Below are positions 53,655-63,396 of a stretch of 64,000 nt of DNA, piece after piece. The notes under the pieces are model-generated. The model was given only the letters and a program-made list of their open reading frames with translations, was not told where the DNA came from and did no database searches. The DNA lies in IMG/VR virus record IMGVR_UViG_3300035181_000471, positions 1-64,000 of that record; one strand, 5' to 3'. Numbering within the stretch: position 1 is the first letter of the stretch; every line of letters starts with the position of its first letter. The position numbers and the translations under genes were made by a program.

Positions 53655-53729
53655 TGGCGGGGGATGAGAGATTCGAACTCCCAGGCGTGGATTTGGAGTC
53701 CACTCGTTTAGCCATTAACGGAATCCCCC
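53655..53729 (-). tRNA. tRNA-Trp(CCA)
   Basis: Cloverleaf, loop CT CCA AA, G73, CCA. Confidence 0.9.
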
Positions 53730-53754
53730 GTAACTAAATAAGAATAACATGAAT

Positions 53755-53829
53755 TGGAGCCTAAGGAGGGAGTTGAACCCTCTTTCCATCCTTACCAAAG
53801 ATGTGTAATAGCCGTTATACTACAGAGGC
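53755..53829 (-). tRNA. tRNA-Thr(GGT), two acceptor mismatches
   Basis: Loop TT GGT AA; acceptor GCCTCTG/CTTAGGC. Confidence 0.8.
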
Positions 53830-53835
53830 ATTGAG

Positions 53836-53856
53836 GTGAGGGGACTGCCCCCTCAC
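53836..53856 (-). terminator. GC-rich hairpin after the Pth-like gene
   Basis: GTGAGGGG/CCCCTCAC. Confidence 0.5.
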
Positions 53857-53862
53857 TAGGGA

Positions 53863-54474
53863 TTACAGAAGTTCGAAGTTTCTGTGGTACCAGAAACCGT
53901 CTTGGAAAGTGTTCATAATGGCAACAGCGGTAATCTTGTTGTCCATGTCTGGCTCTCTCCAAATTGTTTTGTATTCGCCAGGACCAGTCTTCCCAGAGAG
54001 ATCTTTGCTACTGGCGTAAGGACTAGTGTCCTTTTTAGGAGTCATTAGGATGAGAGTCCCATTGGTCCAAGGAGCGAGTGGATGCTCCTTTTGAAACTGT
54101 GCGGCGGCGTGACTAGCCTGGACAACCTTTTGTGAGGTCGAGAGACTTGGATCGACAACGATGTAAAGCTTTTTGGCTCCAGGGTTGTTGAGGTAGGTCT
54201 TGAAGTGTTGAATCCCGGCCTGCATTGGGGCTAGAAGGGCCTTGTATTCTCTTTGCTTGCCTTCGGTATAGGGTAGGGTCTCACAAGGGCCTTTAGCCTT
54301 GTGTCCCGCTAATCCGCGAATCAGAGCGCGATGCTCACTGAGAGCGATATGGAGCATTCTGATTTCGGTTCTAAGGCCACCTTGCTTCTTGTGCTTTTCG
54401 ATAAGCAGTCTGAGCAAGAGTCTAGCGTTGAAGTAAGCTTCTTTTTGTTCCTGAGTGTAAGTGACATAAGCCAT
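53863..54474 (-). CDS. Pth2-like peptidyl-tRNA hydrolase with N-terminal extension
   Basis: KLYIVV...LS..Q...Q.SHA and WREPD....TAVA; start trimmed to MAYV. Confidence 0.72.
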   Translation of the reverse strand: MAYVTYTQEQKEAYFNARLLLRLLIEKHKKQGGLRTEIRMLHIALSEHRALIRGLAGHKAKGPCETLPYTEGKQREYKALLAPMQAGIQHFKTYLNNPGAKKLYIVVDPSLSTSQKVVQASHAAAQFQKEHPLAPWTNGTLILMTPKKDTSPYASSKDLSGKTGPGEYKTIWREPDMDNKITAVAIMNTFQDGFWYHRNFELL

Positions 54475-54551
54475 GTTTTTCTCCTTTAGAATGGTTGGCT
54501 GGTTTGTTAGCGGCAACTTCTAAGGATGGCTTATGGTGAGCGTGATGGCAC

Positions 54552-54575
54552 CTAGAGGTGATTTCTCCCGGTCAT
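54552..54575 (-). promoter_or_regulatory. uORF MTGRNHL-amber upstream of the Pth-like gene
   Basis: AAGGAG-N6-ATG, TAG stop; next in-frame stop TAA at 54531. Confidence 0.5.
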
Positions 54576-54602
54576 ATTATACTCCTTTATGGTTAAGTAA
54601 AA

Positions 54603-54680
54603 TGGTGCCCTCGGAGGAATTCGAATCCCCGATCAAGGTTTTAGAGACCCCAGCTTTAGGCCAGACTAAGCTACGAGGGC
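54603..54680 (-). tRNA. amber suppressor tRNA (anticodon CTA)
   Basis: Perfect acceptor GCCCTCG/CGAGGGC, A73, loop CT CTA AA, TTCGAAT, CCA. Confidence 0.88.
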
Positions 54681-54687
54681 TAGTAAC

Positions 54688-55050
54688 CTAGACTTCTGGG
54701 ATGATTAGAGGCTCAATCTGGCTTAGATCATTGGGAGTCAACTTGACATCACCAAAGGCGGCAAGAGGGAGTGGTTCGAAGGGGACTTCAATCTCAGTGG
54801 TTAGAAGCTCGGTCATTGCGGCGGTAAAACCAGGACCATCTTCAGGTGAAAAGACGAACTGGGTCTTGTCATCATTCAACACACCGTTGAACTTCTCAAT
54901 GAGCTTCTGTCTTTCCGTGTCGAAAGTAGCCATCTCAGCGATCAGCACCTTGGCTAAACGAGAGATCTGGTATGATGTCTTAGTAGGGAACACCTTGTCG
55001 TAAATGGTTGAACCTAGAATGGACTGAATTTCTTGAATCTTTAGCTTCAT
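54688..55050 (-). CDS. hypothetical phage protein (DUF1617-like)
   Basis: P.K.SY.ISRL.K....E...F..ER.KLI.K pattern. Confidence 0.6.
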   Translation of the reverse strand: MKLKIQEIQSILGSTIYDKVFPTKTSYQISRLAKVLIAEMATFDTERQKLIEKFNGVLNDDKTQFVFSPEDGPGFTAAMTELLTTEIEVPFEPLPLAAFGDVKLTPNDLSQIEPLIIPEV

Positions 55051-55075
55051 GTTAACTCCTAAAATATGATACTGC

Positions 55076-55573
55076 TTAAACTGGTCTTTCTGGTCTCATA
55101 CCTTTAAATTTCTCTGGGTATGTTTTCAAAAGGAATTTTCTGGTTTCGGCTTCTTGCTTAAGCGCGCTTTTTTCAAGAGTTCGATCTTTCCAAGGAAGGT
55201 CTTTCTCTTCGTCTACAATGGAGATAAATCTATCAACTCCAAAAACTATATATGCATCGAAGGCGTGGTCTAGTTCGTGAGCGATAATTGGTTCAAGTTT
55301 TTCACGCTTCAAATTGATCTCGTTCCAGTCGAAAGTAATCTCGGCTCTATCATGGAAAATGGCGGTCTGGGCTAGTGTGTTACCCTTTAAATCCCCGATC
55401 TTCCAAGTGATAGGCACGGGAATGGCCTTTAATCTGGCGTTATCAGCGGGTGATAGCTGAAGTAGAGTTTCTAAAGCGGTCTGAATTTGTTGCTGTGGAG
55501 TAGGCTGAGGCTTACAAGTCACTAAAAGAAGGACCGTAAGGGTCGCCAGACATAGCTTGCTGAGTGTGTGCAT
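55076..55573 (-). CDS. putative lipoprotein with HExxH motif
   Basis: LLVTC lipobox; IAHELDH...LE..A. Confidence 0.6.
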   Translation of the reverse strand: MHTLSKLCLATLTVLLLVTCKPQPTPQQQIQTALETLLQLSPADNARLKAIPVPITWKIGDLKGNTLAQTAIFHDRAEITFDWNEINLKREKLEPIIAHELDHAFDAYIVFGVDRFISIVDEEKDLPWKDRTLEKSALKQEAETRKFLLKTYPEKFKGMRPERPV

Positions 55574-55613
55574 ATGAGCCTCAACATAGAAATAGAAATT
55601 AGTTATTTTTTTT

Positions 55614-55699
55614 TGGCGGAAGCGATAGGAATTGAACCTACAACCCTGTTACGGGCGACAGTTTTCGAGACTGCTTGTCATGCCAGTGACCACGCTTCC
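55614..55699 (-). tRNA. tRNA-Ser(CGA)
   Basis: Loop CT CGA AA, long V arm, G73. Confidence 0.9.
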
Positions 55700-55705
55700 G
55701 TGATA

Positions 55706-55888
55706 TTGTGACTCCACCGGACACGGTATTTCGCGCCAACCTAGTCCGAATCGAACGGATTATAGCCCCGAAAAGCTCTTTGGTTCTCCCGTAAGGAGTC
55801 AAGGCGTGAATGGACTTAGGAGGTCTGAATCGCATCTTATAGCCGTCTGCTAAACTGCATCTATTCAGTTCGTTCGTTCAGGTCACAA
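55706..55888 (-). ncRNA. unknown structured RNA, about 183 nt
   Basis: Terminal TTGTGAC/GTCACAA helix, internal hairpins including TCCG-TTCGATT-CGGA; fills the tRNA spacer. Confidence 0.55.
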
Positions 55889-55890
55889 AT

Positions 55891-55964
55891 TGGAGCGGGA
55901 TAGGGGGCTTGAACCCCTGACACTAGCTCGGCAAGCTAAAGTTTTACCACTAAACTAATCCCGC
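55891..55964 (-). tRNA. tRNA-Gly(GCC)
   Basis: Loop TT GCC GA, U73. Confidence 0.9.
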
Positions 55965-55966
55965 AA

Positions 55967-56054
55967 TGGCGGAAGATAAGGGAATCGAACCCTTTAGGCT
56001 GTTATACCTTCACTTTAGCAAAGTGACGCACCTCTCCAACTGTGCCGATCTTCC
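55967..56054 (-). tRNA. tRNA-Ser(GCT)
   Basis: Loop TT GCT AA, long V arm. Confidence 0.9.
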
Positions 56055-56060
56055 ATGATT

Positions 56061-56138
56061 TGGTAATCCCAGCGGGATTTGAACCCGCATTCTCACCTTG
56101 AGAGGGTGGCGTCCTGGCCTGAGTTAGACGATGGGACT
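56061..56138 (-). tRNA. tRNA-Glu(CTC)
   Basis: Loop CT CTC AA. Confidence 0.88.
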
Positions 56139-56142
56139 GTCG

Positions 56143-56964
56143 TTACTGGTGTATCTTGTGTCGCCTATCATTAAAGGAGAACTCAATATACTCTACTTTC
56201 TGGTTACCAGTGAATTTAGTCTTGAATTGTTCAATATATTTATTAGCTTTGCCCTTTTTGACATATGCTATTGTAGTATGAGGCGCATAGTCAGGGAATG
56301 AATTGGCGTTATCTGGGTAGACTTCATTGCAATAATCGAATAAATCCTGGAGTTCTGGACTCTTTTCAACCTTTATAATGAGAACATCGTATGGTGCATC
56401 AGCGGGAGTGAACTGGCTTAAACCTAACCACTCAACCGACTTGACTTCTAGGCTTGGGTTGAACTTGTCTGGTGTTTGGTCCTTAATTCCGTAGAGACAA
56501 GTAATGTGGGGGTAGTCCTCTTTTCCCTTGATCTCTCCATCGGTGTAGACATCCTCTGGATCAACACTTTCAACGAACTCTAGAATTTTCTTAGTGACCT
56601 CTGGAGCGTAAGTCAACTGCACTGTGCTGTAGTCGTAAGCGGCTTGCTTTGTAAGGAGTCTGGCGAAAAAGGTTAGGAACCCCTTTTTACCACCTTGGCC
56701 GTAAGCTCTATCGTGATCGCCTTGAACACTAAGAATGAACAAAACTCCTTCATCAACCTTACACACGGCTCTTATTCCTTGGGATACTCGGATGGAAAGG
56801 AAGCCTGGGTTAGACTTAATTGGTTCTAAGTGGGTTCCTGCCCCATCTCTTAGCTGTTGTTCAGTGGCCTCAGTGACTTTAATCCTCAGAGCATCAAGAA
56901 GACGCTTTATATTCGGATTCTTTTTTGCCTGTTTAGTAGCGTCTTTTCCAAGTTCCATTTGCAT
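56143..56964 (-). CDS. RelE/HigB-like domain fused to a 2H phosphoesterase (Acb1/T4 57B-like)
   Basis: N: HLEP....GFLSIRV..GIRAV.......H..Y; C: PHITCLYG and FPDY.PHTTIAY. Confidence 0.8.
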   Translation of the reverse strand: MQMELGKDATKQAKKNPNIKRLLDALRIKVTEATEQQLRDGAGTHLEPIKSNPGFLSIRVSQGIRAVCKVDEGVLFILSVQGDHDRAYGQGGKKGFLTFFARLLTKQAAYDYSTVQLTYAPEVTKKILEFVESVDPEDVYTDGEIKGKEDYPHITCLYGIKDQTPDKFNPSLEVKSVEWLGLSQFTPADAPYDVLIIKVEKSPELQDLFDYCNEVYPDNANSFPDYAPHTTIAYVKKGKANKYIEQFKTKFTGNQKVEYIEFSFNDRRHKIHQ

Positions 56965-56975
56965 GTAAAGCCCTC

Positions 56976-57131
56976 TTATTCAGCGATGTAGCCAGCCTTG
57001 CGAAGAGCCTGCTTACCGCCAGCCTTGCGAAGAGCCTTGTAATCTTCGATTTCCTTGTTGTAACGAGCAACCTGCTCAGCGGTCAGAACGATCTCAGGCT
57101 CAGCGGTCTTCTTGTTCTTTTCGTTGGTCAT
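56976..57131 (-). CDS. small basic protein, 51 aa, with an ALRKAG duplication
   Basis: Promoter copy plus GGAGG RBS; 20-bp direct repeat. Confidence 0.65.
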   Translation of the reverse strand: MTNEKNKKTAEPEIVLTAEQVARYNKEIEDYKALRKAGGKQALRKAGYIAE

Positions 57132-57147
57132 GTGTCCCTCCACTATT

Positions 57148-57178
57148 ATTATACCAGAGTTAAGTTGATTCTCTTACT
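57148..57178 (-). promoter_or_regulatory. putative phage promoter (AGTAAGAGAA-N13-GGTATAAT)
   Basis: Copy of the recurring motif. Confidence 0.6.
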
Positions 57179-57190
57179 AGAATTGAGAAG

Positions 57191-57358
57191 TTATTTGTTC
57201 CTGTGGGTCTTTTTCTTTCTGACCCCATGCCTAGGTTTGCGGGAAGCATTTTCATTGCGATGCCACTTGCAGTAGGGGCAACTGGCTTCTAGTTCTTTAT
57301 GCCTTTTGGCCCAGACCGTAGAGTTTTCGGTAGTGTCTAGTTCATTTTTGGCTTTCAT
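57191..57358 (-). CDS. small basic Zn-finger-like protein, 55 aa
   Basis: AGGAG RBS; CPYC..H; K/R-rich tail. Confidence 0.6.
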   Translation of the reverse strand: MKAKNELDTTENSTVWAKRHKELEASCPYCKWHRNENASRKPRHGVRKKKTHRNK

Positions 57359-57374
57359 AAAGCTCCTGGAATAA

Positions 57375-57465
57375 TGGGTCCGTCCTAGGGGAGTCGAACC
57401 CCTTGTGCGTAAAATTACGCTGTGGTTTAAAAGACCACGGCCTGAACCGTGCGGCAAAGGACGGA
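57375..57465 (-). tRNA. atypical tRNA, anticodon TTT (Lys), long variable arm, 8-bp acceptor
   Basis: GTGGT-CT TTT AA-ACCAC; V arm GCGTAA/TTACGC; TCCGTCCT/AGGACGGA. Confidence 0.8.
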
Positions 57466-57486
57466 TAATGGTGCTATTTGTGTTTT

Positions 57487-57560
57487 TGGTAGCCACTTGC
57501 AGAATCGAACTGCAAACTCTTCCATGTCGAAGAAGCGGTATCCCACTTACCTAAGCGGCT
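57487..57560 (-). tRNA. tRNA-Val(GAC), C33
   Basis: Loop TC GAC AT. Confidence 0.8.
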
Positions 57561-57645
57561 ATTTTAATTCACTGGGTAGTTGCATTCACCCATCCGGTAG
57601 GGACACCTGTTTTCAAAATCCCGGCTTGTCAAGCTCCTTTAATAG

Positions 57646-57730
57646 TGGTGCGGATAGAGGGAGTCGAACCCCCATGCCGTTAGGCGCTGGCTTCTAAGAC
57701 CAGTTTGTCTACCAATTCCAACATACCCGC
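57646..57730 (-). tRNA. tRNA-Leu(TAG)
   Basis: Loop CT TAG AA, long V arm. Confidence 0.92.
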
Positions 57731-57736
57731 ATCGAA

Positions 57737-57811
57737 TGGAGCCTCTAAGGGGAATCGAACCCCTATCGTCTGATTACGAAACAGACATAATTGCCATTAT
57801 ACTACAGAGGC
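57737..57811 (-). tRNA. tRNA-Thr(CGT)
   Basis: Loop TT CGT AA; T31-T39 mismatch. Confidence 0.88.
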
Positions 57812-57841
57812 AAGAAGTAATTTAGTTGTCCAGTTAAATGT

Positions 57842-57917
57842 TGGTGTGACATGGGGGTTATGATCCCCCTCCGCGACTTTCACAGAGTCGTGTGCATCCG
57901 ATTACACCTATGTCACC
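57842..57917 (-). tRNA. tRNA-His(GTG) with non-canonical T loop
   Basis: Loop CT GTG AA; encoded G-1 opposite A73; T loop ATCATAA. Confidence 0.8.
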
Positions 57918-57959
57918 GTCTGGGGAATGAAGGACCACCTGTCCTAAATTCCGATTCTA

Positions 57960-58038
57960 TGGCGGTTCGTACGGGATTTGAACCCGTGATCTTTTGCGTG
58001 ACAGGCAAATGGGGACGGCCAGACTCCCCTAACGAACC
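57960..58038 (-). tRNA. tRNA-Asp(GTC)
   Basis: Loop CT GTC AC, G73. Confidence 0.9.
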
Positions 58039-58040
58039 AT

Positions 58041-58117
58041 TGGTACCCCCGGTAGGACTCAAACCTACATAATTCACCGTGTAAAGATGATGCCTAATCT
58101 CTCGGCGTCACAGGGGC
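58041..58117 (-). tRNA. tRNA-Val(TAC)
   Basis: Loop TT TAC AC. Confidence 0.85.
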
Positions 58118-58125
58118 ATTGATGT

Positions 58126-58201
58126 TGGAGCCGAATATCAGAATTGAACTGATCTCTCTGCGTTACAAGGGCAGAATAATTATCCACTATACTAATCCGG
58201 C
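58126..58201 (-). tRNA. tRNA-Thr(TGT)
   Basis: Loop CT TGT AA; C31-C39 mismatch. Confidence 0.85.
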
Positions 58202-58208
58202 ATGATAT

Positions 58209-58279
58209 TGGAAGGGCTGTAGGGAATCGAACCCTATCTGTTCGCTTCAAAGGCGAATCTGTCATCCTGTCTCAACCCT
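58209..58279 (-). tRNA. tRNA-Gln(TTG) with degenerate D arm
   Basis: TTCGC-CT TTG AA-GCGAA, good T arm, no clear D stem. Confidence 0.7.
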
Positions 58280-58280
58280 A

Positions 58281-58378
58281 TGGTTTCACACCTGAGCCGT
58301 CAAGCCCCAATCTCCCTAGCCCATCAAGCCGTATGGAAGACAATCGCTAGACTGATGAGATCCGTGCGATAGTGTGAA
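58281..58378 (-). ncRNA. CCA-ended tRNA-like RNA without an anticodon arm
   Basis: TTCACAC/GTGTGAA plus ACCA; nested helices ATCTC/GAGAT, CTAGC/GCTAG, CCAT/ATGG. Confidence 0.6.
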
Positions 58379-58460
58379 TGGCTCTCCATGTAGGAATCGA
58401 ACCTACTTAGCTTGCGCGACTGGTTAACAGCCAGTTACCGACCCGGACAGTATATGGAGA
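58379..58460 (-). tRNA. atypical tRNA-Asn(GTT) with extended variable arm
   Basis: ACTGG-CT GTT AA-CCAGT; V region with GC-GCAA-GC. Confidence 0.78.
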
Positions 58461-58525
58461 ATGAATTTCTTAGATAGTGGCCGTTGATCCACTTACGCTC
58501 TGTCGCTCAGTGCAGAGTATCTGTT

Positions 58526-58601
58526 TGGTGCCTCAGATGGGAGTCGAACCCACAACCAATAGAGTAAGAGTCTACTGCTCGACCAATTGAGCTTCTGAAG
58601 C
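58526..58601 (-). tRNA. tRNA-Lys(CTT)
   Basis: Loop CT CTT AC, conventional fold. Confidence 0.88.
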
Positions 58602-58671
58602 ATAAATACAGCACCCGGCACACTGGCTCTTTTACGCATACGCGACCTGTAGCCTGACGGTGTTGTGATTT

Positions 58672-58733
58672 TGGTGGATACAGTGGGTATTGAACCCACC
58701 TAGGGAGCTACCCTACTCGCCTTGAGTGTACCC
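58672..58733 (-). ncRNA. 62-nt mini-tRNA with Ala identity
   Basis: GGGTACA/TGTATCC (G3.U70), A73, CCA, T arm TTCAATA, 5-nt loop TAGCT. Confidence 0.7.
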
Positions 58734-58738
58734 ATGAT

Positions 58739-58825
58739 CGGTGATCCCAAGGGGAGTCGAACCCCTACAGTCGAGGACGCCTGGGTAAGAGCCAGGGGTG
58801 GTAGCCAGTTGCCACTATTGGGACC
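58739..58825 (-). tRNA. atypical tRNA, anticodon CTT (Lys), long V arm, foldable as 8/4, no encoded CCA
   Basis: CCTGG-CT CTT AC-CCAGG; V arm GTC/GAC; GGTCCCAA/TTGGGATC; ends ACCG. Confidence 0.75.
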
Positions 58826-58902
58826 GTAATTTGCGGCTCTAGGAACCCATCTTCCTAAATTTGATCCTGTCATGCAGGAACCGCCTATTTTTAAAGTTGC
58901 CA

Positions 58903-59259
58903 CTATTTCCAGAGTTTAAAGTTGGTAATTTCATCTTCCGCATTGGAAAGAGCATCCTCAAGGGAGGAGACTTCGGTTTCAAGATGAGAGATACGGCCTT
59001 CAAGAACTGAGAGAACTATTGCAAGACGCTCGGAAACCGTTCCATTCCAAATACCTGGAGTGTCGGGGAACATCCCACAGAGGGGGAGAATCAAGTCACT
59101 GCACTTGGTAAAGTCAGCGTAGACGGCATCTACTTCGTCCAGGGCGACCATTGCTTCCTTGGTGAAGAGTAGCATCTCGTTGGACTCAGGGTCAAAACGA
59201 GTGAGATCCTTGATGTTCTCATCAAGAGCTTCTCGGATCAGTGCAAGCTTTTCGGACAT
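58903..59259 (-). CDS. hypothetical protein
   Basis: Promoter copy plus GGAGG; start trimmed to MSEK. Confidence 0.65.
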   Translation of the reverse strand: MSEKLALIREALDENIKDLTRFDPESNEMLLFTKEAMVALDEVDAVYADFTKCSDLILPLCGMFPDTPGIWNGTVSERLAIVLSVLEGRISHLETEVSSLEDALSNAEDEITNFKLWK

Positions 59260-59275
59260 GAGTGCCTCCATAGTT

Positions 59276-59306
59276 ATTATACTCGGAAGCTTCGTGTTTT
59301 CTTACT
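59276..59306 (-). promoter_or_regulatory. putative phage promoter (AGTAAGAAAA-N13-AGTATAAT)
   Basis: Same boxes and spacing as the copy at 1555. Confidence 0.65.
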
Positions 59307-59313
59307 GTTTATT

Positions 59314-59387
59314 TGGTGGAGCCGGGGAGAATCGAACTCCCGATATCTGGATGCAAACCAGAGGTTATCCCTCTTAACTACGACCCC
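59314..59387 (-). tRNA. tRNA-Ala(TGC)
   Basis: Loop TT TGC AT, G3.U70. Confidence 0.9.
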
Positions 59388-59392
59388 AAAGC

Positions 59393-59473
59393 TAGACACA
59401 TTGTTGGCATTCTTTGAAGAGGAACACGCCAAGACTCTTGTTCAGGGGTTATGGGTTGCTGTTGATGTGTCTA
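59393..59473 (-). ncRNA. ACAGCAAC hairpin element, copy A
   Basis: TAGACACAT/ATGTGTCTA closing stem then CAACAGCAAC. Confidence 0.55.
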
Positions 59474-59499
59474 AGGGCTTAAGCACTACACTTAGGCTT

Positions 59500-59573
59500 T
59501 GGAGCGGGTTACGAGATTCGAACTCGTTTCGACAGCTTGGAAGGCTGAGGCACAACCCATATACCAAACCCGC
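59500..59573 (-). tRNA. tRNA-Gly(TCC)
   Basis: Loop CT TCC AA. Confidence 0.9.
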
Positions 59574-59583
59574 TTAGGCTACT

Positions 59584-60282
59584 TCACTTCTTAATACTCA
59601 ACTTATCAAGCTCTCGATGAAGAGCTTTCAACTTTTTTGCGACTGCTGGAGCTTCCTCTTCCATAGTGTGTTCATGCCACTCTTGGCTAGGACTACTGTG
59701 TGAGTTAGTATTAAGATCCCACCACTTCTCAAGCTCGTCGATTTTAGCTTTAATTTTTTCGATCTTGTCTTTTCGAACCTCAGGGAATTCTTGGAAGGTG
59801 ATGGCGTAATCGTCCTTGTCACCCACATAGGTTCTTCCAAAGTTTACCCAGTTCTCAACATTTCTGAGTTCTTTGTAGTGTTGACCCCAGATGTAGTCTA
59901 CACCCAGCTTCTCAGGGATGGATCTTAGTTGTCTTCCTGCTCCGTAAGCACGGTATTCAGGTAGAACAAAGATTGCAACACCTTTGATACCAGTCTTGTT
60001 TTCCAAGCCGTGGACGCCTAGCTCAACTAAATCAGAGGCGGGTTTCTTCTCTTTCTTCAAGAAGTAGCCACCAATAATCTGTCCATCAGCAAGCGCAACA
60101 TAACAATTACTGAAGTTATTGCCCATTTCTTCTTTGATTTCAGTCTTTACATCCTCTTCTGATAGCCCTAAGGACTCTTTAAAGGACTTAAAACAGACAT
60201 TTAAAGCTTCAGCTACTTCGCTACGCTTCATCTTTCTGATCTGGATATCAAAGGCTGTCTTGGTGAGTAAGGTGGAAATCAT
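59584..60282 (-). CDS. GNAT-family acetyltransferase
   Basis: YVA..DGQIIG, IFVLPEYRAYGAGRQL motif A; start trimmed to MISTLL. Confidence 0.82.
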   Translation of the reverse strand: MISTLLTKTAFDIQIRKMKRSEVAEALNVCFKSFKESLGLSEEDVKTEIKEEMGNNFSNCYVALADGQIIGGYFLKKEKKPASDLVELGVHGLENKTGIKGVAIFVLPEYRAYGAGRQLRSIPEKLGVDYIWGQHYKELRNVENWVNFGRTYVGDKDDYAITFQEFPEVRKDKIEKIKAKIDELEKWWDLNTNSHSSPSQEWHEHTMEEEAPAVAKKLKALHRELDKLSIKK

Positions 60283-60319
60283 TGTGTTCTCTCTATTGAG
60301 AAATAGAAAGTTAAAAGAT

Positions 60320-60396
60320 TGGTAGTCCCAACGGGATTCGAACCCGTGATAGCCACATTGAAAGTGTGGTGCCTTAAGCCGCTTGGCTATGAGACT
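60320..60396 (-). tRNA. tRNA-Glu(TTC)
   Basis: Loop CT TTC AA. Confidence 0.9.
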
Positions 60397-60405
60397 ACGA
60401 ATTTG

Positions 60406-60505
60406 ATCATCTGGATGGAGTCGAACCATCGGCCACCCGGAGTCCCCTGCAATTTGGTCCTTAACCGTGAGAGGTGGTGCGCTCTGACCGCTGAGCTACA
60501 AATGA
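60406..60505 (-). ncRNA. tRNA-like RNA with expanded anticodon domain
   Basis: Canonical acceptor, D and T arms; about 50 nt between D and T arms; no CCA. Confidence 0.65.
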
Positions 60506-60506
60506 T

Positions 60507-60586
60507 TGGTGTCCGTGGTCGGATTCGAACCGACAGTCACGACCTTCTGAGGATCGTTGCGTTGCCAGAGATTAGCATACACGGAC
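60507..60586 (-). tRNA. tRNA-Leu(CAG) with short variable loop
   Basis: Loop CT CAG AA; V loop TGACT. Confidence 0.85.
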
Positions 60587-60591
60587 ATGAT

Positions 60592-60665
60592 TGGCGAGAG
60601 TGCCAGGGGTCAAACCGGGGCCAAAGATTTTGGAGACCTTCATGCTATCGTAACACCTCACTCCC
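60592..60665 (-). tRNA. tRNA-Trp(CCA), second copy, irregular T arm
   Basis: Loop CT CCA AA; T loop TTTGACC. Confidence 0.72.
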
Positions 60666-60754
60666 ATGAGTAAATTTTGCAGAGTTATTGGCATATCTGC
60701 AACCTCCTTATGCAAAACCTACTGCGATCCCTACTGGGATTCTAGGTGGAGTAT

Positions 60755-60831
60755 TGGTCGGCCACAAGTGATTCGAACACTTGACCCCTTGCTCCCGAAG
60801 CAAGTGCGCTACCAGACTGCGCCAGTGGCCG
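60755..60831 (-). tRNA. tRNA-Pro(CGG)
   Basis: Loop TT CGG GA. Confidence 0.92.
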
Positions 60832-60841
60832 TTAATTTTAT

Positions 60842-60928
60842 TGGTCGGTGTGACAGGAATCGAACCTGCGTTTGTCCCTAATGGACCTAGCACCCCAAGC
60901 TAGTGGTCAACCATTGACCCACACACCG
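60842..60928 (-). tRNA. atypical tRNA-Pro(GGG) with long variable arm
   Basis: Loop TT GGG GT; V arm GTCC-ATTAG-GGAC. Confidence 0.85.
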
Positions 60929-60957
60929 AATTTCGTAACTCTGAATGAAATTTGAAT

Positions 60958-61032
60958 TGGTCGGGGTGAGAGGAATTGAACCTCCTACTACTCCCATCCA
61001 AAGAGAGGCGTCTACCGATGACTTACACCCCG
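60958..61032 (-). tRNA. tRNA-Pro(TGG)
   Basis: Loop TT TGG AT. Confidence 0.85.
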
Positions 61033-61144
61033 GTATTTTTAAGATGAATGGGGACTTTTTAGTCTTTGGATTAGTTTTAGACCATCCACATTCACAACAC
61101 ACTGGCCCATGTTTTTTAATGAGCAAAGTTCTTTCATAGTTCAA
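61033..61144 (-). pseudogene. truncated HNH-endonuclease remnant
   Basis: R..LI.KHG..C.ECGW...NP.T.K.P resembles the segment preceding an HNH core; the frame runs into tRNA-Pro. Confidence 0.55.
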
Positions 61145-61154
61145 CCTACTTTAT

Positions 61155-61229
61155 TGGTAGCCCTACCTGGGATCGAACCAGAATCTAACGATTATCGGTC
61201 GTTTGCACTAGCCATTGTGCTATAGGGCC
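61155..61229 (-). tRNA. tRNA-Ile(GAT), C33
   Basis: Loop CC GAT AA. Confidence 0.85.
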
Positions 61230-61278
61230 AATTTGGAGGCGGTCCCTCCAGCAAAGAGGGCGCTTATCCGGCGTTGGC

Positions 61279-61354
61279 TGGTGGAGCCATCGGGAGTTCA
61301 ACCCGATCCACTAGACTGCGAAACTAGTATGCCACGCCTCAACACTTTGGCCCC
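61279..61354 (-). tRNA. tRNA-Ala(CGC)
   Basis: Loop TT CGC AG, G3.U70, T31-T39 mismatch. Confidence 0.8.
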
Positions 61355-61356
61355 AT

Positions 61357-61432
61357 TGGAGCGTCTGACCGGACTTGAACCGGCTCCCTGAGTTTGGAAG
61401 ACTCTAGTGCTACCATTAAACACCACAGACGC
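61357..61432 (-). tRNA. tRNA-Gly(TCC), second copy
   Basis: Loop CT TCC AA. Confidence 0.88.
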
Positions 61433-61440
61433 ATTGAAAT

Positions 61441-61516
61441 TGGTGGATCTGACAGGGATCGAACCTGCCACCTACTGGATGCAAACCAGTCGCTCTCCCA
61501 AATGAGCTACAGACCC
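61441..61516 (-). tRNA. tRNA-Ala(TGC), second copy
   Basis: Loop TT TGC AT, G3.U70. Confidence 0.92.
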
Positions 61517-61531
61517 GTGTTTGTCTCTTAT

Positions 61532-61610
61532 TGGTGCAGGTAACGGGAGTCGAACCCGCAAAAACACAGCCTTCTCAGAACTGCCGCAATACCAAATAGC
61601 GTATACCTGC
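61532..61610 (-). tRNA. tRNA-Leu(GAG) with short variable loop
   Basis: Loop CT GAG AA; V loop TGTTTTT. Confidence 0.83.
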
Positions 61611-61617
61611 ATAGATA

Positions 61618-61696
61618 CAAGACTCTCTTTTTTCAAGGCAGGATTACCTGCGGCATCCCCATTAACAGGAGAATTTTGGTTGCTGTAAGAGTCTTG
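61618..61696 (-). ncRNA. ACAGCAAC hairpin element, copy B
   Basis: CAAGACTCT/AGAGTCTTG stem then TACAGCAAC; two inner hairpins. Confidence 0.6.
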
Positions 61697-61770
61697 GTGC
61701 CTTAGGTTGGAGTTGAACCAACCACACAAGGATTTTCAGTCCTTTGCTCTACCACCTGAGCTACTAAGGC
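61695..61770 (-). tRNA. tRNA-Phe(GAA)
   Basis: Loop CT GAA AA. Confidence 0.93.
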
Positions 61771-61848
61771 ATGATAAAAATTTGCGAGTGTGACTTACAT
61801 TGACTCCCAAGGTCACACAGACTGTAAGCCTACCTTTTTTCACAAAAT

Positions 61849-61927
61849 TGGTGGAGGATACCGGAATCGAACCGATTTCTATTCCTTTTCAGGGAATCGC
61901 TGGAATGACCACACTAGCTCACCCTCC
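61849..61927 (-). tRNA. tRNA-Phe(GAA), second copy
   Basis: Loop CT GAA AA; large D loop. Confidence 0.82.
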
Positions 61928-61944
61928 ATGATATTTAGATGAAT

Positions 61945-62029
61945 TGGTGGAACATGATGGGAATCGAACCCATAACCTCTGCACGGCATTGCGCCCAAAC
62001 AGTGTGCTTACCAAAGCCACTTCAGCCCC
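61945..62029 (-). ncRNA. tRNA-like RNA with Ala-type acceptor and elongated anticodon arm
   Basis: GGGGCTG acceptor with bulge, G3.U70, ACCA, good T arm; no 7-nt anticodon loop. Confidence 0.65.
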
Positions 62030-62035
62030 ATATAT

Positions 62036-62110
62036 TGGTGGAGCTACGGGGAGTCGAACCCCGAACTTTTGGATGCCGTCCAAATGTGTTCCCGCTAGCA
62101 CTATAGCCCC
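62036..62110 (-). tRNA. tRNA-Ala(GGC), C33
   Basis: Loop AC GGC AT, G3.U70. Confidence 0.85.
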
Positions 62111-62117
62111 ATGATGC

Positions 62118-62191
62118 TGGCTCCAAAAAGGGGAATCGAACCCCTGTCTCTGACTTAACAGGTCAGCATCCTACCATTGGATGATTTTGGA
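62118..62191 (-). tRNA. tRNA-Asn(GTT), conventional
   Basis: Loop CT GTT AA, G73. Confidence 0.9.
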
Positions 62192-62270
62192 ATAGTAAGG
62201 TCTCTCCCTTGTCAAGCCTGGATGATTAGCGGCTTTCCCTCCGAGGTTGGGTTGGACAGTGAATCGTTTT

Positions 62271-62981
62271 TTAGATTGCCTTCACTATCTCATTCGCCTG
62301 ATTTTTACAAACCCAGGTGTCCAACTTTTTAAGGACTAATTGTCCATGATCAAATTCCCAATGACAGTTGGGGCAAAGACCAACCAGATTATCGGGGGCA
62401 TTGATTTCTTTCAGTGTAGCGGAATCTGGGAAACTCATTACTGCTTGAATATGGCAGACCTCCACATGCTTACTATACCCACAATTAAAACAAGAATCGG
62501 TCTTGTGGCAAACACTAGCTATTCTTTGAGCGTGTTTTGTTATAACAGACCTAGCTCTCTGCCAATTAGTGCCACCGGATTCAGATTTCCCAAATAACTC
62601 TAACTTTGTTACATGGTCTCTTTTCCCTTTTAGGGGGTCTTTCTCTGCTTTAATCTTAACTACTTTTTCCTTTTTAGGTCTAAGTTTGTTATTGTAAGAG
62701 GCCGCGCAAGAGGTGGAACAGAAAATCCCGCTTTTAGTCTGAGATGGGACTCTGTGAAACTGCTTGGAACAGTTAAAACAAGAGACCTCTAATCGAGTTA
62801 TGTTATGATCGTGAAAGCATCGTTGGGAGCAGAATAATTTGATTTGCCCTCGTCTTTTCGATATAATTAAGTTGGCCTTAGATTGAGTGGTCTCTTTCCC
62901 ACACTGCTCACAAACTACAGGAATGCGATCTTTGTATTTCTTGTCCTTATATTCGATCAGCAGCGTTTCTAGTTGAGTCAT
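62271..62981 (-). CDS. HNH homing endonuclease with N-terminal Zn ribbons
   Basis: CxxC/FCSxxC repeats; C..CGY...EVCHI...N..NL..LCPNCH. Confidence 0.88.
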   Translation of the reverse strand: MTQLETLLIEYKDKKYKDRIPVVCEQCGKETTQSKANLIISKRRGQIKLFCSQRCFHDHNITRLEVSCFNCSKQFHRVPSQTKSGIFCSTSCAASYNNKLRPKKEKVVKIKAEKDPLKGKRDHVTKLELFGKSESGGTNWQRARSVITKHAQRIASVCHKTDSCFNCGYSKHVEVCHIQAVMSFPDSATLKEINAPDNLVGLCPNCHWEFDHGQLVLKKLDTWVCKNQANEIVKAI

Positions 62982-63020
62982 AATTTCTCCCTCTATAATC
63001 AAGAGTTAGAAAGTCGATTT

Positions 63021-63097
63021 TGGTTGCGGGAGGTGGAATCGAACCACGCTTTCACTATGAGCTTATGAGACTCTAGGCCAACCTCTGGCCCCGCTAT
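63021..63097 (-). tRNA. tRNA(CAT), initiator-like 1:72 mismatch, irregular
   Basis: Loop CT CAT AA; A1/A72; lacks the three GC pairs of initiators. Confidence 0.68.
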
Positions 63098-63105
63098 AAT
63101 TTTAT

Positions 63106-63180
63106 TGGTCCTCCAGGCAGGAATTGAACCCGCACTTCATGGTTCGAAGCCATGTGTTCTATCCGTTATACTACTGGAAG
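63106..63180 (-). tRNA. tRNA-Arg(TCG)
   Basis: Loop CT TCG AA. Confidence 0.88.
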
Positions 63181-63189
63181 ATAATTTCT

Positions 63190-63307: not shown

Positions 63308-63308
63308 A

Positions 63309-63396
63309 TGGCGGAAGATACAGGAATCGAACCTGCTTGCCTTTGACAGCCCATGCTTTCCAGGCATGTGTGACGCTCCTACTTCACCGATCTTCC
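63309..63396 (-). tRNA. tRNA-Ser(GGA)
   Basis: Loop CT GGA AA, long V arm. Confidence 0.9.

What the first reader, a model, noticed from the sequence alone, without database searches (positions are those of the whole stretch)
53863..60282. The tRNA array is interleaved with enzymes that could act on tRNA or the ribosome
Seen: Pth2-like, RelE-like/2H fusion, GNAT and two small basic proteins sit between tRNA genes. Known: TacT/AtaT GNATs acetylate aminoacyl-tRNA and Pth reverses this; RelE cuts A-site mRNA; 2H enzymes open cyclic phosphates. Inference: a translation-takeover island that disables host tRNA/mRNA while supplying structurally altered phage tRNAs.
Basis: inference. Interest (0 to 1): 0.6.

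Follow-up and report, generated by a model that had tools for sequence, protein, structure and literature searches.

The report
Stop-codon-sensing switch in phage tRNA array
Inside a giant phage's block of about 43 tRNA genes, an amber-suppressor tRNA, a tiny leader gene carrying the matching stop codon and a Pth2-type hydrolase gene form a conserved cassette that looks like a switch turned on by stop-codon read-through; beside it sits a toxin-antitoxin-like pair, while the acetyltransferase is an incidental passenger.

Summary
About 43 tRNA genes on the minus strand (53655-64191) of a 221-kb phage genome are interleaved with roughly ten ORFs. These include a Pth2-fold protein (A), a YoeB/RelE-fold + 2H phosphoesterase fusion (D), a GNAT (H) and small ORFs.

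The GNAT shows no TacT/AtaT signal and is not kept in related tRNA arrays.

Two modules are conserved:
- **Suppressor cassette.** Gene A follows an amber-suppressor tRNA(CUA) in 12 of 14 lineages. In 14 lineages, including the one without an adjacent tRNA, the spacer holds a mini-ORF: SD-ATG, 1-8 codons, TAG, then 4-6 codons ending in Pro-stop (window: MTGRNHL*VPSRSP*). A hairpin that hides A's ribosome-binding site follows. Lak megaphages carry tRNA(UUA) with a TAA version, so the sensor stop covaries with the anticodon.
- **Toxin-antitoxin-like pair.** D is preceded by a small ORF (E) predicted to bind its toxin-like domain (score 0.75, best control 0.18).

My reading: read-through by the suppressor parks a ribosome at the Pro-stop and switches on the hydrolase. 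All mechanisms are inferred; nothing was tested at the bench. No paper I found describes the cassette.

The parts
53655..64000 (-). tRNA array: 36 ARAGORN plus 6 Rfam-only tRNA genes in the window. It continues to 64191 in the genome.
54603..54680 (-). Amber-suppressor tRNA, anticodon CUA, with encoded CCA (ARAGORN labels it 'Pyl').
   Evidence: (55.4 bits). An orthologous tRNA sits upstream of the A gene in 12 of 14 lineages.
54531..54587 (-). Leader mini-ORF. SD AAGGAG 54582-54587; ATG 54573-54575; in-frame TAG 54552-54554; read-through part ends in Pro then TAA 54531-54533. Peptide: MTGRNHL*VPSRSP*.
   Evidence: It is the only SD-preceded match to the loose motif in the whole 221-kb genome.
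54482..54526 (-). Predicted hairpin. The 5' arm (54514-54526) starts 4 nt after the leader's second stop. The 3' arm (54482-54500) pairs with 5 of the 6 bases of gene A's SD (54481-54486).
53863..54474 (-). Gene A, 203 aa. N-terminal three-helix domain (residues 1-99) of unknown kind. C-terminal Pth2-fold hydrolase domain (residues 100-203), with K116, Q119, H122, D176 and T182 invariant.
54688..55050 (-). ORF B, 120 aa, phrog_1401, function unknown. Conserved only in the closest relative, L014.
55076..55573 (-). ORF C, 165 aa. Lipoprotein-type signal (LLVTC) and an HELDH motif, both read by eye. Conserved only in L014.
56143..56964 (-). Gene D, 273 aa. YoeB/RelE-fold domain (residues 1-90; 56695-56964), a linker with invariant GGKKG, and a 2H phosphoesterase domain (residues 110-273; 56146-56637) carrying both HxT motifs.
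56976..57131 (-). Gene E, 51 aa, candidate antitoxin-like partner of D's N-terminal domain.
   Evidence: A small ORF occupies the same place in all relatives. Complex prediction.
57191..57352 (-). ORF F, about 53 aa, very basic, with a CPYC motif. Not conserved in relatives; may not be a gene.
58903..59271 (-). ORF G, 122 aa, acidic with weak coiled-coil-family matches. No family; not found in relatives.
59584..60282 (-). Gene H, 232 aa. GNAT acetyltransferase domain (about residues 1-165) plus a charged C-terminal extension, partly shared by the closest homologue. An accessory gene.
62271..63002 (-). HNH homing-type endonuclease inside the array.

Best explanation
The region is the tRNA array of a jumbo phage from microbial-mat and sediment metagenomes. 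Protein genes have accumulated between the tRNAs. Most of them (GNAT, B, C, F, G, HNH) are lineage-specific passengers. Two modules are conserved.

**Module 1: a read-through-sensing cassette.** Its order is suppressor tRNA(CUA), then a leader mini-ORF, then a hairpin, then gene A.
- The leader has a strong SD, ATG, 1-8 codons and an in-frame UAG.
- If RF1 terminates at the UAG, the ribosome leaves. The hairpin then keeps A's ribosome-binding site paired, and A stays off.
- If the charged suppressor decodes the UAG, the ribosome adds 4-6 residues ending in R-x-P or P-P and meets a second stop.
- Termination after proline is slow. The parked ribosome therefore covers the 5' arm of the hairpin, which frees A's SD and turns A on.
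- A is a Pth2-type ester hydrolase with an extra helical domain. It most likely hydrolyses peptidyl- or N-blocked aminoacyl-tRNA that builds up when stop codons are suppressed, possibly including the leader's own peptidyl-tRNA(Pro). That would reset the switch.

**Module 2: E-D.** D is a YoeB/RelE-type ribosome-dependent RNase domain fused to a 2H cyclic phosphodiesterase. E is a small antitoxin-like protein that holds D in check.

**Shown versus inferred.**
- Shown by computation: the folds, the motifs, the conserved gene order, the leader and its covariation with the anticodon, the predicted hairpin, and the predicted E-D interface.
- Inferred: stalling, the switch logic, the substrates of A and D, and any effect on the host.
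For: **The cassette.**
- A tRNA(CUA) lies 94-280 nt upstream of the A gene in 11 of 14 lineages clustered at 70% identity, and 542 nt upstream in a twelfth. In several loci it is the only tRNA present.
- Lak megaphages are the only hits for A among 50,697 phage records. They have a tRNA(UUA) upstream as the only tRNA in 8.3 kb.
- The leader mini-ORF is found in 14 of 14 lineages, including L032, which lacks an adjacent tRNA. Examples: MTGRNHL*VPSRSP*, MVGRTHL*VDNRGP*, MKTL*VSPRAP*, MS*TRPP*, MKY*QRPP*.
- In Lak-B5 the leader is MELQHW-TAA-VTCDRGP-TAA. The first stop therefore matches the anticodon of the neighbouring tRNA, and the RGP-stop tail is kept.
- In the own genome (442 kb counting both strands) the loose motif occurs 9 times. 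With an SD it occurs only once, at this site.
- Predicted pairing between the 25 nt after the second stop and A's SD/AUG sums to 85.0 pairs over 13 lineages. Shuffled controls give 29.5 +/- 9.6, with a maximum of 55.1. The arm sequences differ between lineages.
- The genome itself uses the standard code. Coding density is 92%, TAG ends 33 of 184 ORFs, and there are no long read-through extensions. The suppressor is therefore not there to read a recoded genome.

**Protein A.**
- Pth2 fold.
- Pth2 motif 1 aligns with Bit1 and with an entry named peptidyl-tRNA hydrolase.
- Phage families phrog_1866 and phrog_3668 ('hydrolase') match 27 and 22 of 27 members.

**D and E.**
- Folds.
- The ten best rows of a profile search of PDB sequences are all YoeB or HigB family toxins, one of them deposited under the name RelB. 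YoeB's Glu, Arg and His columns align to E47, R65 and H84.
- Standalone 89-106-aa homologues have an upstream partner gene overlapping by 4 nt, in a 305-kb phage contig and in a bacterial chromosome.
- E is conserved.
- The predicted E-D complex scores 0.75. The best of three controls scores 0.18. That mark was reached by 58 of 80 solved complexes and 2 of 110 mismatched pairs. The three runs agree in at least 85% of contacts, and partner pLDDT is at least 78.
Against: - There is no experimental or expression evidence. No RNA run holds the locus.
- RNAalifold on a MAFFT alignment of the spacers gave no consensus structure. The hairpin therefore rests on single-sequence folds plus a shuffle control. 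In 4 of 13 lineages the pairing score is no better than shuffles.
- That Pro-stop or RxP-stop causes stalling here is taken from knowledge of TnaC, SecM and C-terminal-proline effects. It was not tested.
- A does not reach the Pfam PTH2 threshold. The best E-value is 0.12, in 2 of 27 members, and the own genome gives no match. Hydrolase activity is therefore inferred from fold and motifs.
- The target of suppression outside the leader is unknown.
- L037/L038, the most distant members, show no clear leader.
- In Lak the second stop is also TAA, so the same tRNA could read through it as well.
- The complex prediction may partly reflect the model's memory of solved toxin-antitoxin complexes.
Confidence: 0.6

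Rival explanations
1. This is a takeover island in which the GNAT acetylates (host) aminoacyl-tRNA as TacT/AtaT do, the Pth2-like enzyme reverses this for the phage, and RelE plus 2H destroy host mRNA.
For: All three folds are present. Pth is known to counter TacT (from memory). The genes lie in one co-oriented block.
Against: - The GNAT gives no TacT/AtaT-type match.
- It has four homologues, none seen in a tRNA array.
- It is absent from the related arrays that keep A and D.
- A is linked to the suppressor tRNA and its leader, even in loci with no other tRNA and no GNAT.
Confidence: 0.1
2. An RNA-repair and anti-defence reading. D's 2H domain heals the 2',3'-cyclic phosphate ends of tRNAs (or ribosome-bound RNAs) cut by host anticodon nucleases, and the phage Rnl1 ligase then seals them. 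The RelE-fold domain only brings it to the ribosome. A clears peptidyl-tRNA from jammed ribosomes, as Iyer et al. proposed for jumbo-phage PTH2.
For: - A T4 Rnl1-type ligase (70766-71374) and a second RNA ligase (95293-95787) are encoded.
- No Pnkp-type kinase was found, so another healing enzyme would be needed.
- The best VIA matches of the 2H domain are CPDase/LigT enzymes (Z 14.1).
- Relatives fuse the same 2H domain to an RNase T-type exonuclease, which suggests work on RNA 3' ends.
- The jumbo-phage review makes this proposal (PMC7824862).
Against: - No 5'-kinase and no Tpt1 were found, although the genome is only about 77% complete.
- Relatives with 2H alone or 2H-exonuclease are not in tRNA arrays.
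- The RelE-like domain keeps its YoeB-like catalytic columns and has an antitoxin-like partner. That fits an active nuclease better than a mere adaptor.
- This reading does not explain the leader mini-ORF.
Confidence: 0.2
3. D's 2H domain is an Acb1-like enzyme that destroys cyclic-nucleotide immune signals. Its place among the tRNAs is incidental.
For: Pfam Acb1 is the best Pfam hit, though below threshold (7.7e-5). Foldseek's top hits are a phage phosphodiesterase, the penguinpox cGAMP phosphodiesterase and Acb1.
Against: The scores for Acb1 and for the RNA-ligase-type 2H family are tied. VIA ranks CPDase/LigT above Acb1 (14.1 against 12.3). Fusion to a ribosome-dependent RNase fold with an antitoxin-like partner has no parallel in Acb1.
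Confidence: 0.12
4. The mini-ORF is a 'bar'-type toxic minigene. Its short product drops off as peptidyl-tRNA and starves the host of a tRNA. Phage enzyme A recycles these peptidyl-tRNAs. The read-through tail and the hairpin would then be fortuitous.
For: - The short form is 2-8 codons with a strong SD, as lambda bar minigenes are (from memory).
- It sits next to a Pth-type enzyme.
- Minigenes are known to regulate a Txe toxin operon (PMC8708949, listed).
Against: - The residues after the first stop are conserved as protein (V..R.P-stop) across lineages whose DNA differs.
- The first stop changes to TAA where the tRNA anticodon is UUA.
- Neither feature is expected if only the short form matters.
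Confidence: 0.1

Closest known systems
Leader-peptide translational attenuation by arrest peptides (SecM-secA, ErmCL-ermC, TnaC; PepNL of E. coli, PMC11890864)
   Same: - A short upstream ORF.
- A predicted stall close to its end.
- A downstream hairpin that hides the SD of the regulated gene.
- In TnaC the arrest is at a stop codon after a C-terminal proline. [quoted passage not shown]
   Different: - The input here is decoding of an internal stop codon by a dedicated suppressor tRNA encoded immediately upstream.
- Read-through is proposed to create the arrest, whereas in PepNL it cancels it.
- The regulated gene is a Pth2-type hydrolase.
- Stalling itself was not tested.
prfB (RF2) autoregulation through an in-frame UGA
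   Same: An in-frame stop codon early in a message serves as a gauge of termination against alternative decoding (from memory).
   Different: The alternative event here is suppression by a tRNA, not a +1 frameshift. The output is a separate downstream gene controlled through RNA structure.
Pth2 (archaeal/eukaryotic peptidyl-tRNA hydrolase; PTH2 of jumbo phages, PMC7824862)
   Same: The fold (Z 9.9) and the K..Q..H motif of helix 1. Phage proteins annotated as peptidyl-tRNA hydrolase are the best viral structural matches.
   Different: - Below the Pfam threshold.
- An extra 100-residue helical N-terminal domain, which is a separate ORF in Lak.
- Obligatory linkage to a suppressor tRNA and its leader.
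YoeB-YefM, RelE-RelB and HigB-HigA type II toxin-antitoxin pairs
   Same: - The fold of D residues 1-90.
- Aligned Glu, Arg and His columns.
- A small upstream partner gene, overlapping by 4 nt in the standalone homologues.
- A predicted partner interface lying over the beta-sheet face that carries R65.
   Different: - Fused to a 2H phosphoesterase through a linker with invariant GGKKG.
- Encoded in a lytic-type jumbo phage tRNA array.
- The partner E matches no antitoxin family.
- The Pfam ParE_like/RelE models are not reached.
Suppressor tRNAs of stop-codon-recoded phages (Lak, crAss-like; bioRxiv 10.1101/2021.08.26.457843) and of standard-code jumbo phages (XacN1, PMC5852040)
   Same: A phage-encoded tRNA(CUA), or tRNA(UUA) in Lak. 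XacN1 likewise has CUA suppressors with no identifiable read-through target.
   Different: This genome is not recoded. Those papers do not report a leader mini-ORF or a linked hydrolase: the word 'hydrolase' does not occur in the recoding preprint.
TacT/AtaT GNAT toxins
   Same: GNAT fold with an acetyl-CoA motif.
   Different: No sequence signal for that subfamily, no adjacent antitoxin-like gene examined, and not conserved with the array.

Membership tests
Pth2 (PF01981) peptidyl-tRNA hydrolase | Sequence match to the family model at its curated threshold. | tested here: not met
   No match in the own genome at E <= 10. Only 2 of 27 family members match, with best E 0.12.
Pth2 (PF01981) peptidyl-tRNA hydrolase | Pth2 alpha/beta fold. 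| tested here: met
   VIA Z 9.9, rmsd 2.5, 95 residues aligned to 1wn2; Z 8.3 to 2gax; the next unrelated row scores 5.7. Foldseek top hits are 3erj, 2zv3, 1xty and 1q7s. Atlas TM 0.83 to a viral cluster carrying PF01981.
Pth2 (PF01981) peptidyl-tRNA hydrolase | Conserved Lys/Gln/His of helix 1 and the Asp...Thr motif near the C-terminus. | tested here: inconclusive
   Motif 1 aligns to Bit1 and to 24bt, but only at E 0.4-1.3. K116, Q119, H122, D176 and T182 are invariant in the family. Which of them are catalytic in Pth2 is recalled from memory.
Pth2 (PF01981) peptidyl-tRNA hydrolase | Hydrolysis of peptidyl-tRNA. | not testable with these tools
   Needs an enzyme assay or pth(ts) complementation.
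RelE/YoeB/HigB ribosome-dependent mRNA endonucleases | RelE/ParE superfamily fold. | tested here: met
   Residues 1-90: Z 9.1 to 2khe (25% identity), 8.8 to 3bpq, 8.7 to 6kml, 8.3 to 2a6q.
RelE/YoeB/HigB ribosome-dependent mRNA endonucleases | Catalytic Glu/Arg/His(/Tyr) of YoeB. | tested here: inconclusive
   The profile alignment to YoeB 8yxv places E47, R65 and H84 on the PEPLK Glu, the RL(I/V)Y Arg and the C-terminal His, at E 0.01. R65 and Y88 are invariant and H84 nearly so across standalone homologues. The identity of YoeB's catalytic residues is from memory.
RelE/YoeB/HigB ribosome-dependent mRNA endonucleases | Match to curated family models (ParE_toxin, ParE_like and others). | tested here: not met
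   No Pfam hit for D's N-terminal domain. Standalone homologues reach ParE_like only at E 0.002-0.015, below the GA threshold.
Type II toxin-antitoxin pair | A small partner gene directly upstream that binds the toxin. | tested here: met
   A 49-62-aa ORF sits directly upstream in every relative. E is 56% identical in L014. Standalone homologues show 4-nt overlaps with their partner. Predicted complex 0.75 against best control 0.18; this is a prediction, not a measurement.
Type II toxin-antitoxin pair | Toxicity of the toxin and its neutralisation by the partner. | not testable with these tools
   Needs expression in a laboratory strain.
2H phosphoesterase superfamily | Two HxT/S motifs on the 2H fold. 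| tested here: met
   H153-x-T155 and H229-T230-T231 are invariant. Z 14.1 to 5h7f and 4qak. Foldseek E 3e-6.
Acb1 (PF23474) anti-CBASS nuclease | Family-level sequence match and cyclic-oligonucleotide substrate. | tested here: inconclusive
   22.9 bits against a GA threshold of 27, tied with 2_5_RNA_ligase2 at 21.7 bits. The substrate is not testable here.
GNAT acetyltransferases | GNAT fold signature with the R/QxxGxG/A acetyl-CoA motif. | tested here: met
   Homologue P0064 scores 27.1 bits against GA 20.7 for PF00583. R111-x-x-G114-x-G116 is invariant. phrog_1249 at 9.4e-7.
TacT/AtaT/ItaT tRNA-acetylating toxins | Sequence kinship with the solved toxins. | tested here: not met
   A profile of five members against PDB sequences returns only generic acetyltransferases (4e2a, CurA, AAC and others) and none of the toxins, at E <= 10.
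Arrest-peptide / leader attenuation switches | A short ORF whose end lies just upstream of a structure that sequesters the next gene's SD. | tested here: met
   Leader found in 14 lineages. The hairpin starts 4 nt after the second stop and pairs with the SD in the window. Pairing exceeds all 100 shuffles in sum. RNAalifold gave no consensus.
Arrest-peptide / leader attenuation switches | Ribosome stalling on the leader. | not testable with these tools
   Needs toeprinting or ribosome profiling.
Stop-codon-recoded phage (code 15) | In-frame TAG in many genes, with coding density restored by reading TAG as sense. | tested here: not met
   Coding density 92.1% under code 11 against 93.9% with TAG read as sense. 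TAG ends 33 of 184 ORFs. The two long in-frame cases are ordinary TAGGAG gene junctions followed by a start codon.

The most novel reading that the evidence does not exclude
The suppressor tRNA, its leader and the Pth2-like enzyme form a self-contained homeostat for stop-codon suppression. It is shared by standard-code jumbo phages and recoded Lak megaphages. The leader measures how often the phage's own suppressor beats the host release factor. It sets the level of an enzyme that acts on the suppressor's acylated or peptidyl form, or on the products of read-through. The cassette would then be the control device that lets a phage run a second genetic code inside a standard-code host, and a stepping stone towards recoding.
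Probability: 0.3. Interest if true: 0.9.

Novelty: new variant of a known kind. Interest (0 to 1): 0.8.

Why it matters
How phages that read TAG or TAA as sense impose their code on a standard-code host is an open question. So is why standard-code jumbo phages carry amber suppressors with no visible target. Both are raised in the recoding preprint and in the XacN1 paper.

A conserved cassette in which the sensor stop codon covaries with the suppressor's anticodon gives a concrete handle on both questions. It is a fragment of about 0.8 kb, and its logic can be tested with reporters in E. coli.

It also assigns a context to a widespread family of phage proteins with no family assignment: 29 clusters with no Pfam domain and no informative name. 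It would add a new input, suppressor tRNA activity, to the short list of signals read by leader peptides.

The fusion of a YoeB-like RNase to a 2H phosphodiesterase, with its own antitoxin-like partner, is a second architecture I found no description of. It links RNA cleavage to the chemistry of the RNA end it leaves.

Tried and rejected
- **Single-sequence PDB searches.** Searches with A, D and H gave nothing meaningful. A profile of full-length A also found nothing.
- **Viral-contig scans.** Scans with single proteins A and D found no relatives. Only the profile of A worked.
- **Nucleotide search.** The region matched only scattered tRNAs in known phages.
- **Genome-wide TAG recoding.** Considered and rejected.
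- **Identity of the suppressor tRNA.** It could not be inferred. It is no closer to any paralogue (at most 0.69 identity) than to its orthologues in other phages (0.58-0.78).
- **Consensus RNA structure.** RNAalifold on the aligned spacers gave no structure, probably because the alignment is poor. I fell back on single-sequence folds with shuffle controls.
- **Family scans of small proteins.** NCBIfam and Pfam gave nothing for B, C, E, G or for the partner proteins of the standalone toxin homologues.
- **The GNAT as TacT-like.** Rejected for lack of any signal.
- **Missing functions.** Searches of the own genome for RtcB, CCA-adding enzyme, AAA_33 kinase, Tpt1 and RF-1 found none. The record is only about 77% complete, so absence is weak evidence.
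- **Expression.** No RNA sequencing run holds the locus, so expression could not be examined and read laying was not used.
- **Most distant A relatives.** L037/L038 show no convincing leader.

Full report
**What the window is.** The window is the first 64 kb of a single 221,217-bp virus record. CheckV rates the record as about 77% complete. G+C content is even at about 46%. The DNA occurs in microbial-mat and sediment metagenomes, and no RNA run holds it. No known phage is close at the nucleotide level; only scattered tRNAs match.

**The observation.** ARAGORN finds 36 tRNA genes in the window and a 37th just beyond it, all on the minus strand between 53655 and 64191. Rfam confirms the array and adds six more. 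Between the tRNAs, on the same strand, lie ORFs A (53863-54516), B, C, D (56143-56964), E, F, G and H (59584-60282), plus an HNH endonuclease.

**The three domain calls.**
- *Protein A.* It has no Pfam hit. An AlphaFold model built on 27 homologues has mean pLDDT 83.5. It shows three long N-terminal helices and a C-terminal alpha/beta domain.
  - The best solved matches of the C-terminal domain are Pth2 enzymes. Foldseek's top hits are 3erj, 2zv3, 1xty and 1q7s. VIA gives Z 9.9 to 1wn2 and 8.3 to 2gax, with unrelated rows at 5.7 or lower.
  - The best viral matches are phage 'peptidyl-tRNA hydrolases' from Myrna, RaK2, VH7D and Atu_ph07.
  - An Atlas viral cluster carrying PF01981 matches at TM 0.83.
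  - A domain profile aligns the motif K-x-V-Q-x-x-H-A with the same motif of Bit1 and of another Pth2, though weakly.
  - PF01981 itself is not reached.
  - All 27 members match phrog_1866, and 22 match phrog_3668 'hydrolase'.
- *Protein D.* The model (pLDDT 84.3) has three parts.
  - An N-terminal RelE-superfamily domain: Z 9.1 to T. thermophilus RelE, and 8.3-8.8 to archaeal RelE, HigB, YafQ and YoeB.
  - A disordered linker carrying an invariant GGKKG.
  - A 2H domain: Z 14.1, Foldseek E 3e-6, with both HxT motifs invariant.
- *Protein H.* It is a GNAT.

**Which of these genes are kept in relatives.**
- Full-length D occurs in eight protein clusters. Others have the 2H domain alone, or fused to an RNase T-type exonuclease.
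- A has 29 clusters, all unannotated.
- H has only four homologues.
- Related contigs L001 (52% and 45% identity) and L014 (71% and 67%) also carry tRNA arrays interleaved with ORFs.
- Both keep A and D. L014 also keeps B, C and E. Neither has H, F or G, and both carry a methyltransferase that is absent here.
- GNAT homologues elsewhere sit among tightly packed protein genes.
- Relatives with 2H alone or with 2H-exonuclease lie in early-gene blocks without tRNAs.
- Interleaving as such therefore looks like accretion in a permissive region. Only A and D-E stand out.

**The suppressor tRNA and gene A.**
- In the window, the tRNA directly upstream of A has the anticodon CUA (54603-54680).
- The same holds in L001, L004, L005, L006, L008, L011, L012, L013 and L014, and in 13 of 14 testable metagenome loci.
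- In L004, L008, L026-L029 and L031 it is the only tRNA present.
- Clustering the A proteins at 70% identity gives 14 lineages. Eleven have tRNA(CUA) 94-280 nt upstream, and one (L037/L038) has it 542 nt upstream. One (Lak) has tRNA(UUA). One (L032) has none adjacent.
- Among 50,697 phage records, A's C-terminal domain hits only the 15 Lak megaphages, which are TAG-recoded according to the recoding preprint.
- In Lak-B5 and Lak-A1 the only tRNA within 8.3 kb is a suppressor with anticodon UUA, 500-600 nt upstream. A 127-aa ORF lies in between.

**The genome is not recoded.**
- Under the standard code, 184 long ORFs cover 92% of the genome.
- TAG ends 33 of them. Reading TAG as sense adds almost nothing.
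- The two long in-frame TAG cases are ordinary junctions: TAGGAG followed by a start codon.
- Read-through extensions after TAG are no longer than those after TAA.
- The suppressor therefore has no evident target among the phage's genes. The same was reported for XacN1.

**The leader mini-ORF.**
- In every lineage the spacer between the tRNA and A holds a strong SD, an ATG, 1-8 codons and an in-frame TAG. Four to six further codons follow, ending in proline, and then a second stop.
- In the window the sequence is ATG ACC GGG AGA AAT CAC CTC TAG GTG CCA TCA CGC TCA CCA TAA (54575-54531), giving MTGRNHL*VPSRSP*.
- Other lineages read MTGKHL*VDSRSP*, MVGRTHL*VDNRGP*, MKTL*VSPRAP*, MFMSFNHL*VVSRSP*, MS*TRPP*, MKY*QRPP*, MKKL*VSTRPP*, MS*NRSP* and ML*IHSPP*.
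- L032, which has no adjacent tRNA, has MFKSLNGL*VLINSP*.
- The part after the TAG is conserved as protein (V..R-x-P or P-P before the stop) while the DNA differs. It must therefore be translated at least sometimes.
- In Lak-B5, where the tRNA anticodon is UUA, the mini-ORF is MELQHW-TAA-VTCDRGP-TAA. Lak-A1 has MKLQHW-TAA-VT.... The first stop follows the anticodon, and the RGP-stop tail is retained.
- A loose version of the motif occurs nine times in the 442 kb of both strands of the own genome. With an SD it occurs only once, at this site.

**The hairpin.**
- In the window a hairpin begins 4 nt after the second stop. Its 5' arm (54514-54526) pairs with 54482-54500, which includes five of the six bases of A's SD.
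- Single-sequence folds show the same layout in most lineages, with different arm sequences. Where there is no SD, the start codon is sequestered instead.
- I summed, over 13 lineages, the expected base pairs between the 25 nt after the second stop and the SD/AUG window. The total is 85.0, against 29.5 +/- 9.6 (maximum 55.1) for shuffled spacers. Four lineages individually show no excess.
- RNAalifold on the MAFFT alignment gave no consensus. I attribute this to misalignment, but it means that formal covariation support is lacking.

**Reading of the cassette (inference).**
- A ribosome that terminates at the UAG sits too far upstream to touch the hairpin.
- One that reads through is expected to pause at the Pro-stop. 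Slow termination after C-terminal proline and RxP-type arrest are known from TnaC and SecM (from memory).
- The paused ribosome covers the 5' arm, which frees A's SD.
- The cassette would thus make A only when the suppressor is charged and winning against RF1.
- The nearest published analogy for a link between stop-codon read-through and arrest is PepNL, where read-through cancels the arrest.
- A would then remove peptidyl- or N-blocked aminoacyl-tRNA arising from suppression, perhaps the leader's own peptidyl-tRNA(Pro).
- Neither the recoding preprint (no occurrence of 'hydrolase') nor my other searches describe this cassette.
- Jumbo-phage PTH2 has been noted, but only as a possible ribosome-rescue factor.

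**The D-E module.**
- A profile of D's N-terminal domain finds standalone proteins of 89-106 aa.
- Profiled against PDB sequences, the ten best rows are all YoeB or HigB family toxins, one of them deposited under the name RelB (E 0.01-0.36). The alignment puts E47, R65 and H84 on YoeB's PEPLK Glu, its RL(I/V)Y Arg and its terminal His. That these are YoeB's catalytic residues is from memory.
- R65 and Y88 are invariant across the family.
- Standalone members are preceded by a small gene overlapping by 4 nt, both in a 305-kb phage contig and in a bacterial chromosome. This is the usual toxin-antitoxin layout.
- D is always preceded by a 49-62-aa ORF. E is 56% identical in L014.
- The complex prediction supports binding of E to D(1-96). 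The score is 0.75 and the best of three controls is 0.18. The mark was reached by 58 of 80 solved complexes and 2 of 110 mismatched pairs. The runs agree in at least 85% of contacts, and partner pLDDT is at least 78. The interface lies over the sheet that includes R65. This shows likeness to toxin-antitoxin complexes; it is not proof of binding.
- What the fused 2H domain adds is open. It could fix or alter the cyclic-phosphate end left by the RNase. It could heal cut RNAs for the phage's Rnl1 ligase, given that no Pnkp-type kinase was found. Or it could degrade cyclic-nucleotide signals as Acb1 does.

**The GNAT.** A five-member profile finds only generic acetyltransferases among solved structures and none of the tRNA-acetylating toxins. 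With so few homologues and no conserved context, its substrate cannot be named. I treat it as an accessory gene.

**Verdict.** The most notable content of the region is the cassette of suppressor tRNA, leader, hairpin and Pth2-like gene, which I found no description of. The toxin-antitoxin-like YoeB-2H fusion comes second. Every mechanistic step is inferred. The bench tests listed under next steps are simple and would be decisive.

Noticed in passing
window 57375-57465, 58740-58825, 60842-60928, 63746-63832, 58379-58460 (minus strand): tRNA-Lys(UUU), Lys(CUU), Pro(GGG), Arg(ACG) and Asn(GUU) are 82-91 nt long and fold with an extra stem-loop in the variable region. That class-II-like shape is unusual for these amino acids. 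L001 has the same long Lys, Arg and Asn tRNAs.
   Followed up: partly
L001 13483-13560; L024 2632-2709: In one lineage the A gene is also followed by a tRNA that ARAGORN reads with a four-base 'ttaa' anticodon. This may be an ochre-type or 8-nt-loop suppressor, in which case A would be flanked by two suppressor-like tRNAs.
   Followed up: no
window 60406-60505 (minus strand): A 100-nt Rfam tRNA match that ARAGORN calls only when introns are allowed (Val-CAC with an odd insertion). It may be an intron-bearing or degenerate tRNA.
   Followed up: no
genome 140000-200000 (outside the window): In the plus-strand, presumably late, region nearly all long ORFs end in TAA (39 TAA, 3 TAG, 0 TGA). The minus-strand half uses all three stops. 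This could reflect expression level or avoidance of suppressible stops.
   Followed up: partly
genome 70766-71374 and 95293-95787 (outside the window): A T4 Rnl1-type RNA ligase and a second RNA_ligase-family gene are present. No Pnkp-type kinase, Tpt1, RtcB or CCA-adding enzyme was detected in the 77%-complete record.
   Followed up: partly
window 55076-55573 (minus strand): ORF C has a lipoprotein-type signal peptide (LLVTC) and an HELDH zinc-protease-like motif. It matches no family and is conserved in L014.
   Followed up: no
window 52793-53536 (plus strand) and 51098-52698 (minus strand): A papain-family (C1) cysteine protease is encoded on the opposite strand right at the edge of the tRNA array. 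Next to it are an IMPDH/GMP-reductase-like gene and an NT5C nucleotidase. Both of those are syntenic in relatives.
   Followed up: no
L005 190-6039: A related phage carries a DUF2828 (Ro/TROVE-like) protein, a metallophosphatase and an RNA ligase a few kb upstream of its suppressor-tRNA/A cassette.
   Followed up: no
P0012-P0032 (e.g. L039 6001-7317): A widespread 438-aa phage protein fuses the same 2H domain to an RNase T/DnaQ-type exonuclease. It lies in early-gene blocks near RNR and gp32.
   Followed up: partly
window 54688-54690 (minus strand): ORF B ends in TAG only 7 nt before the 5' end of the suppressor tRNA gene. Several other TAG-terminated ORFs have a back-up stop immediately after (TAGTAA or TAGTAG in 4 of 33).
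   Followed up: no
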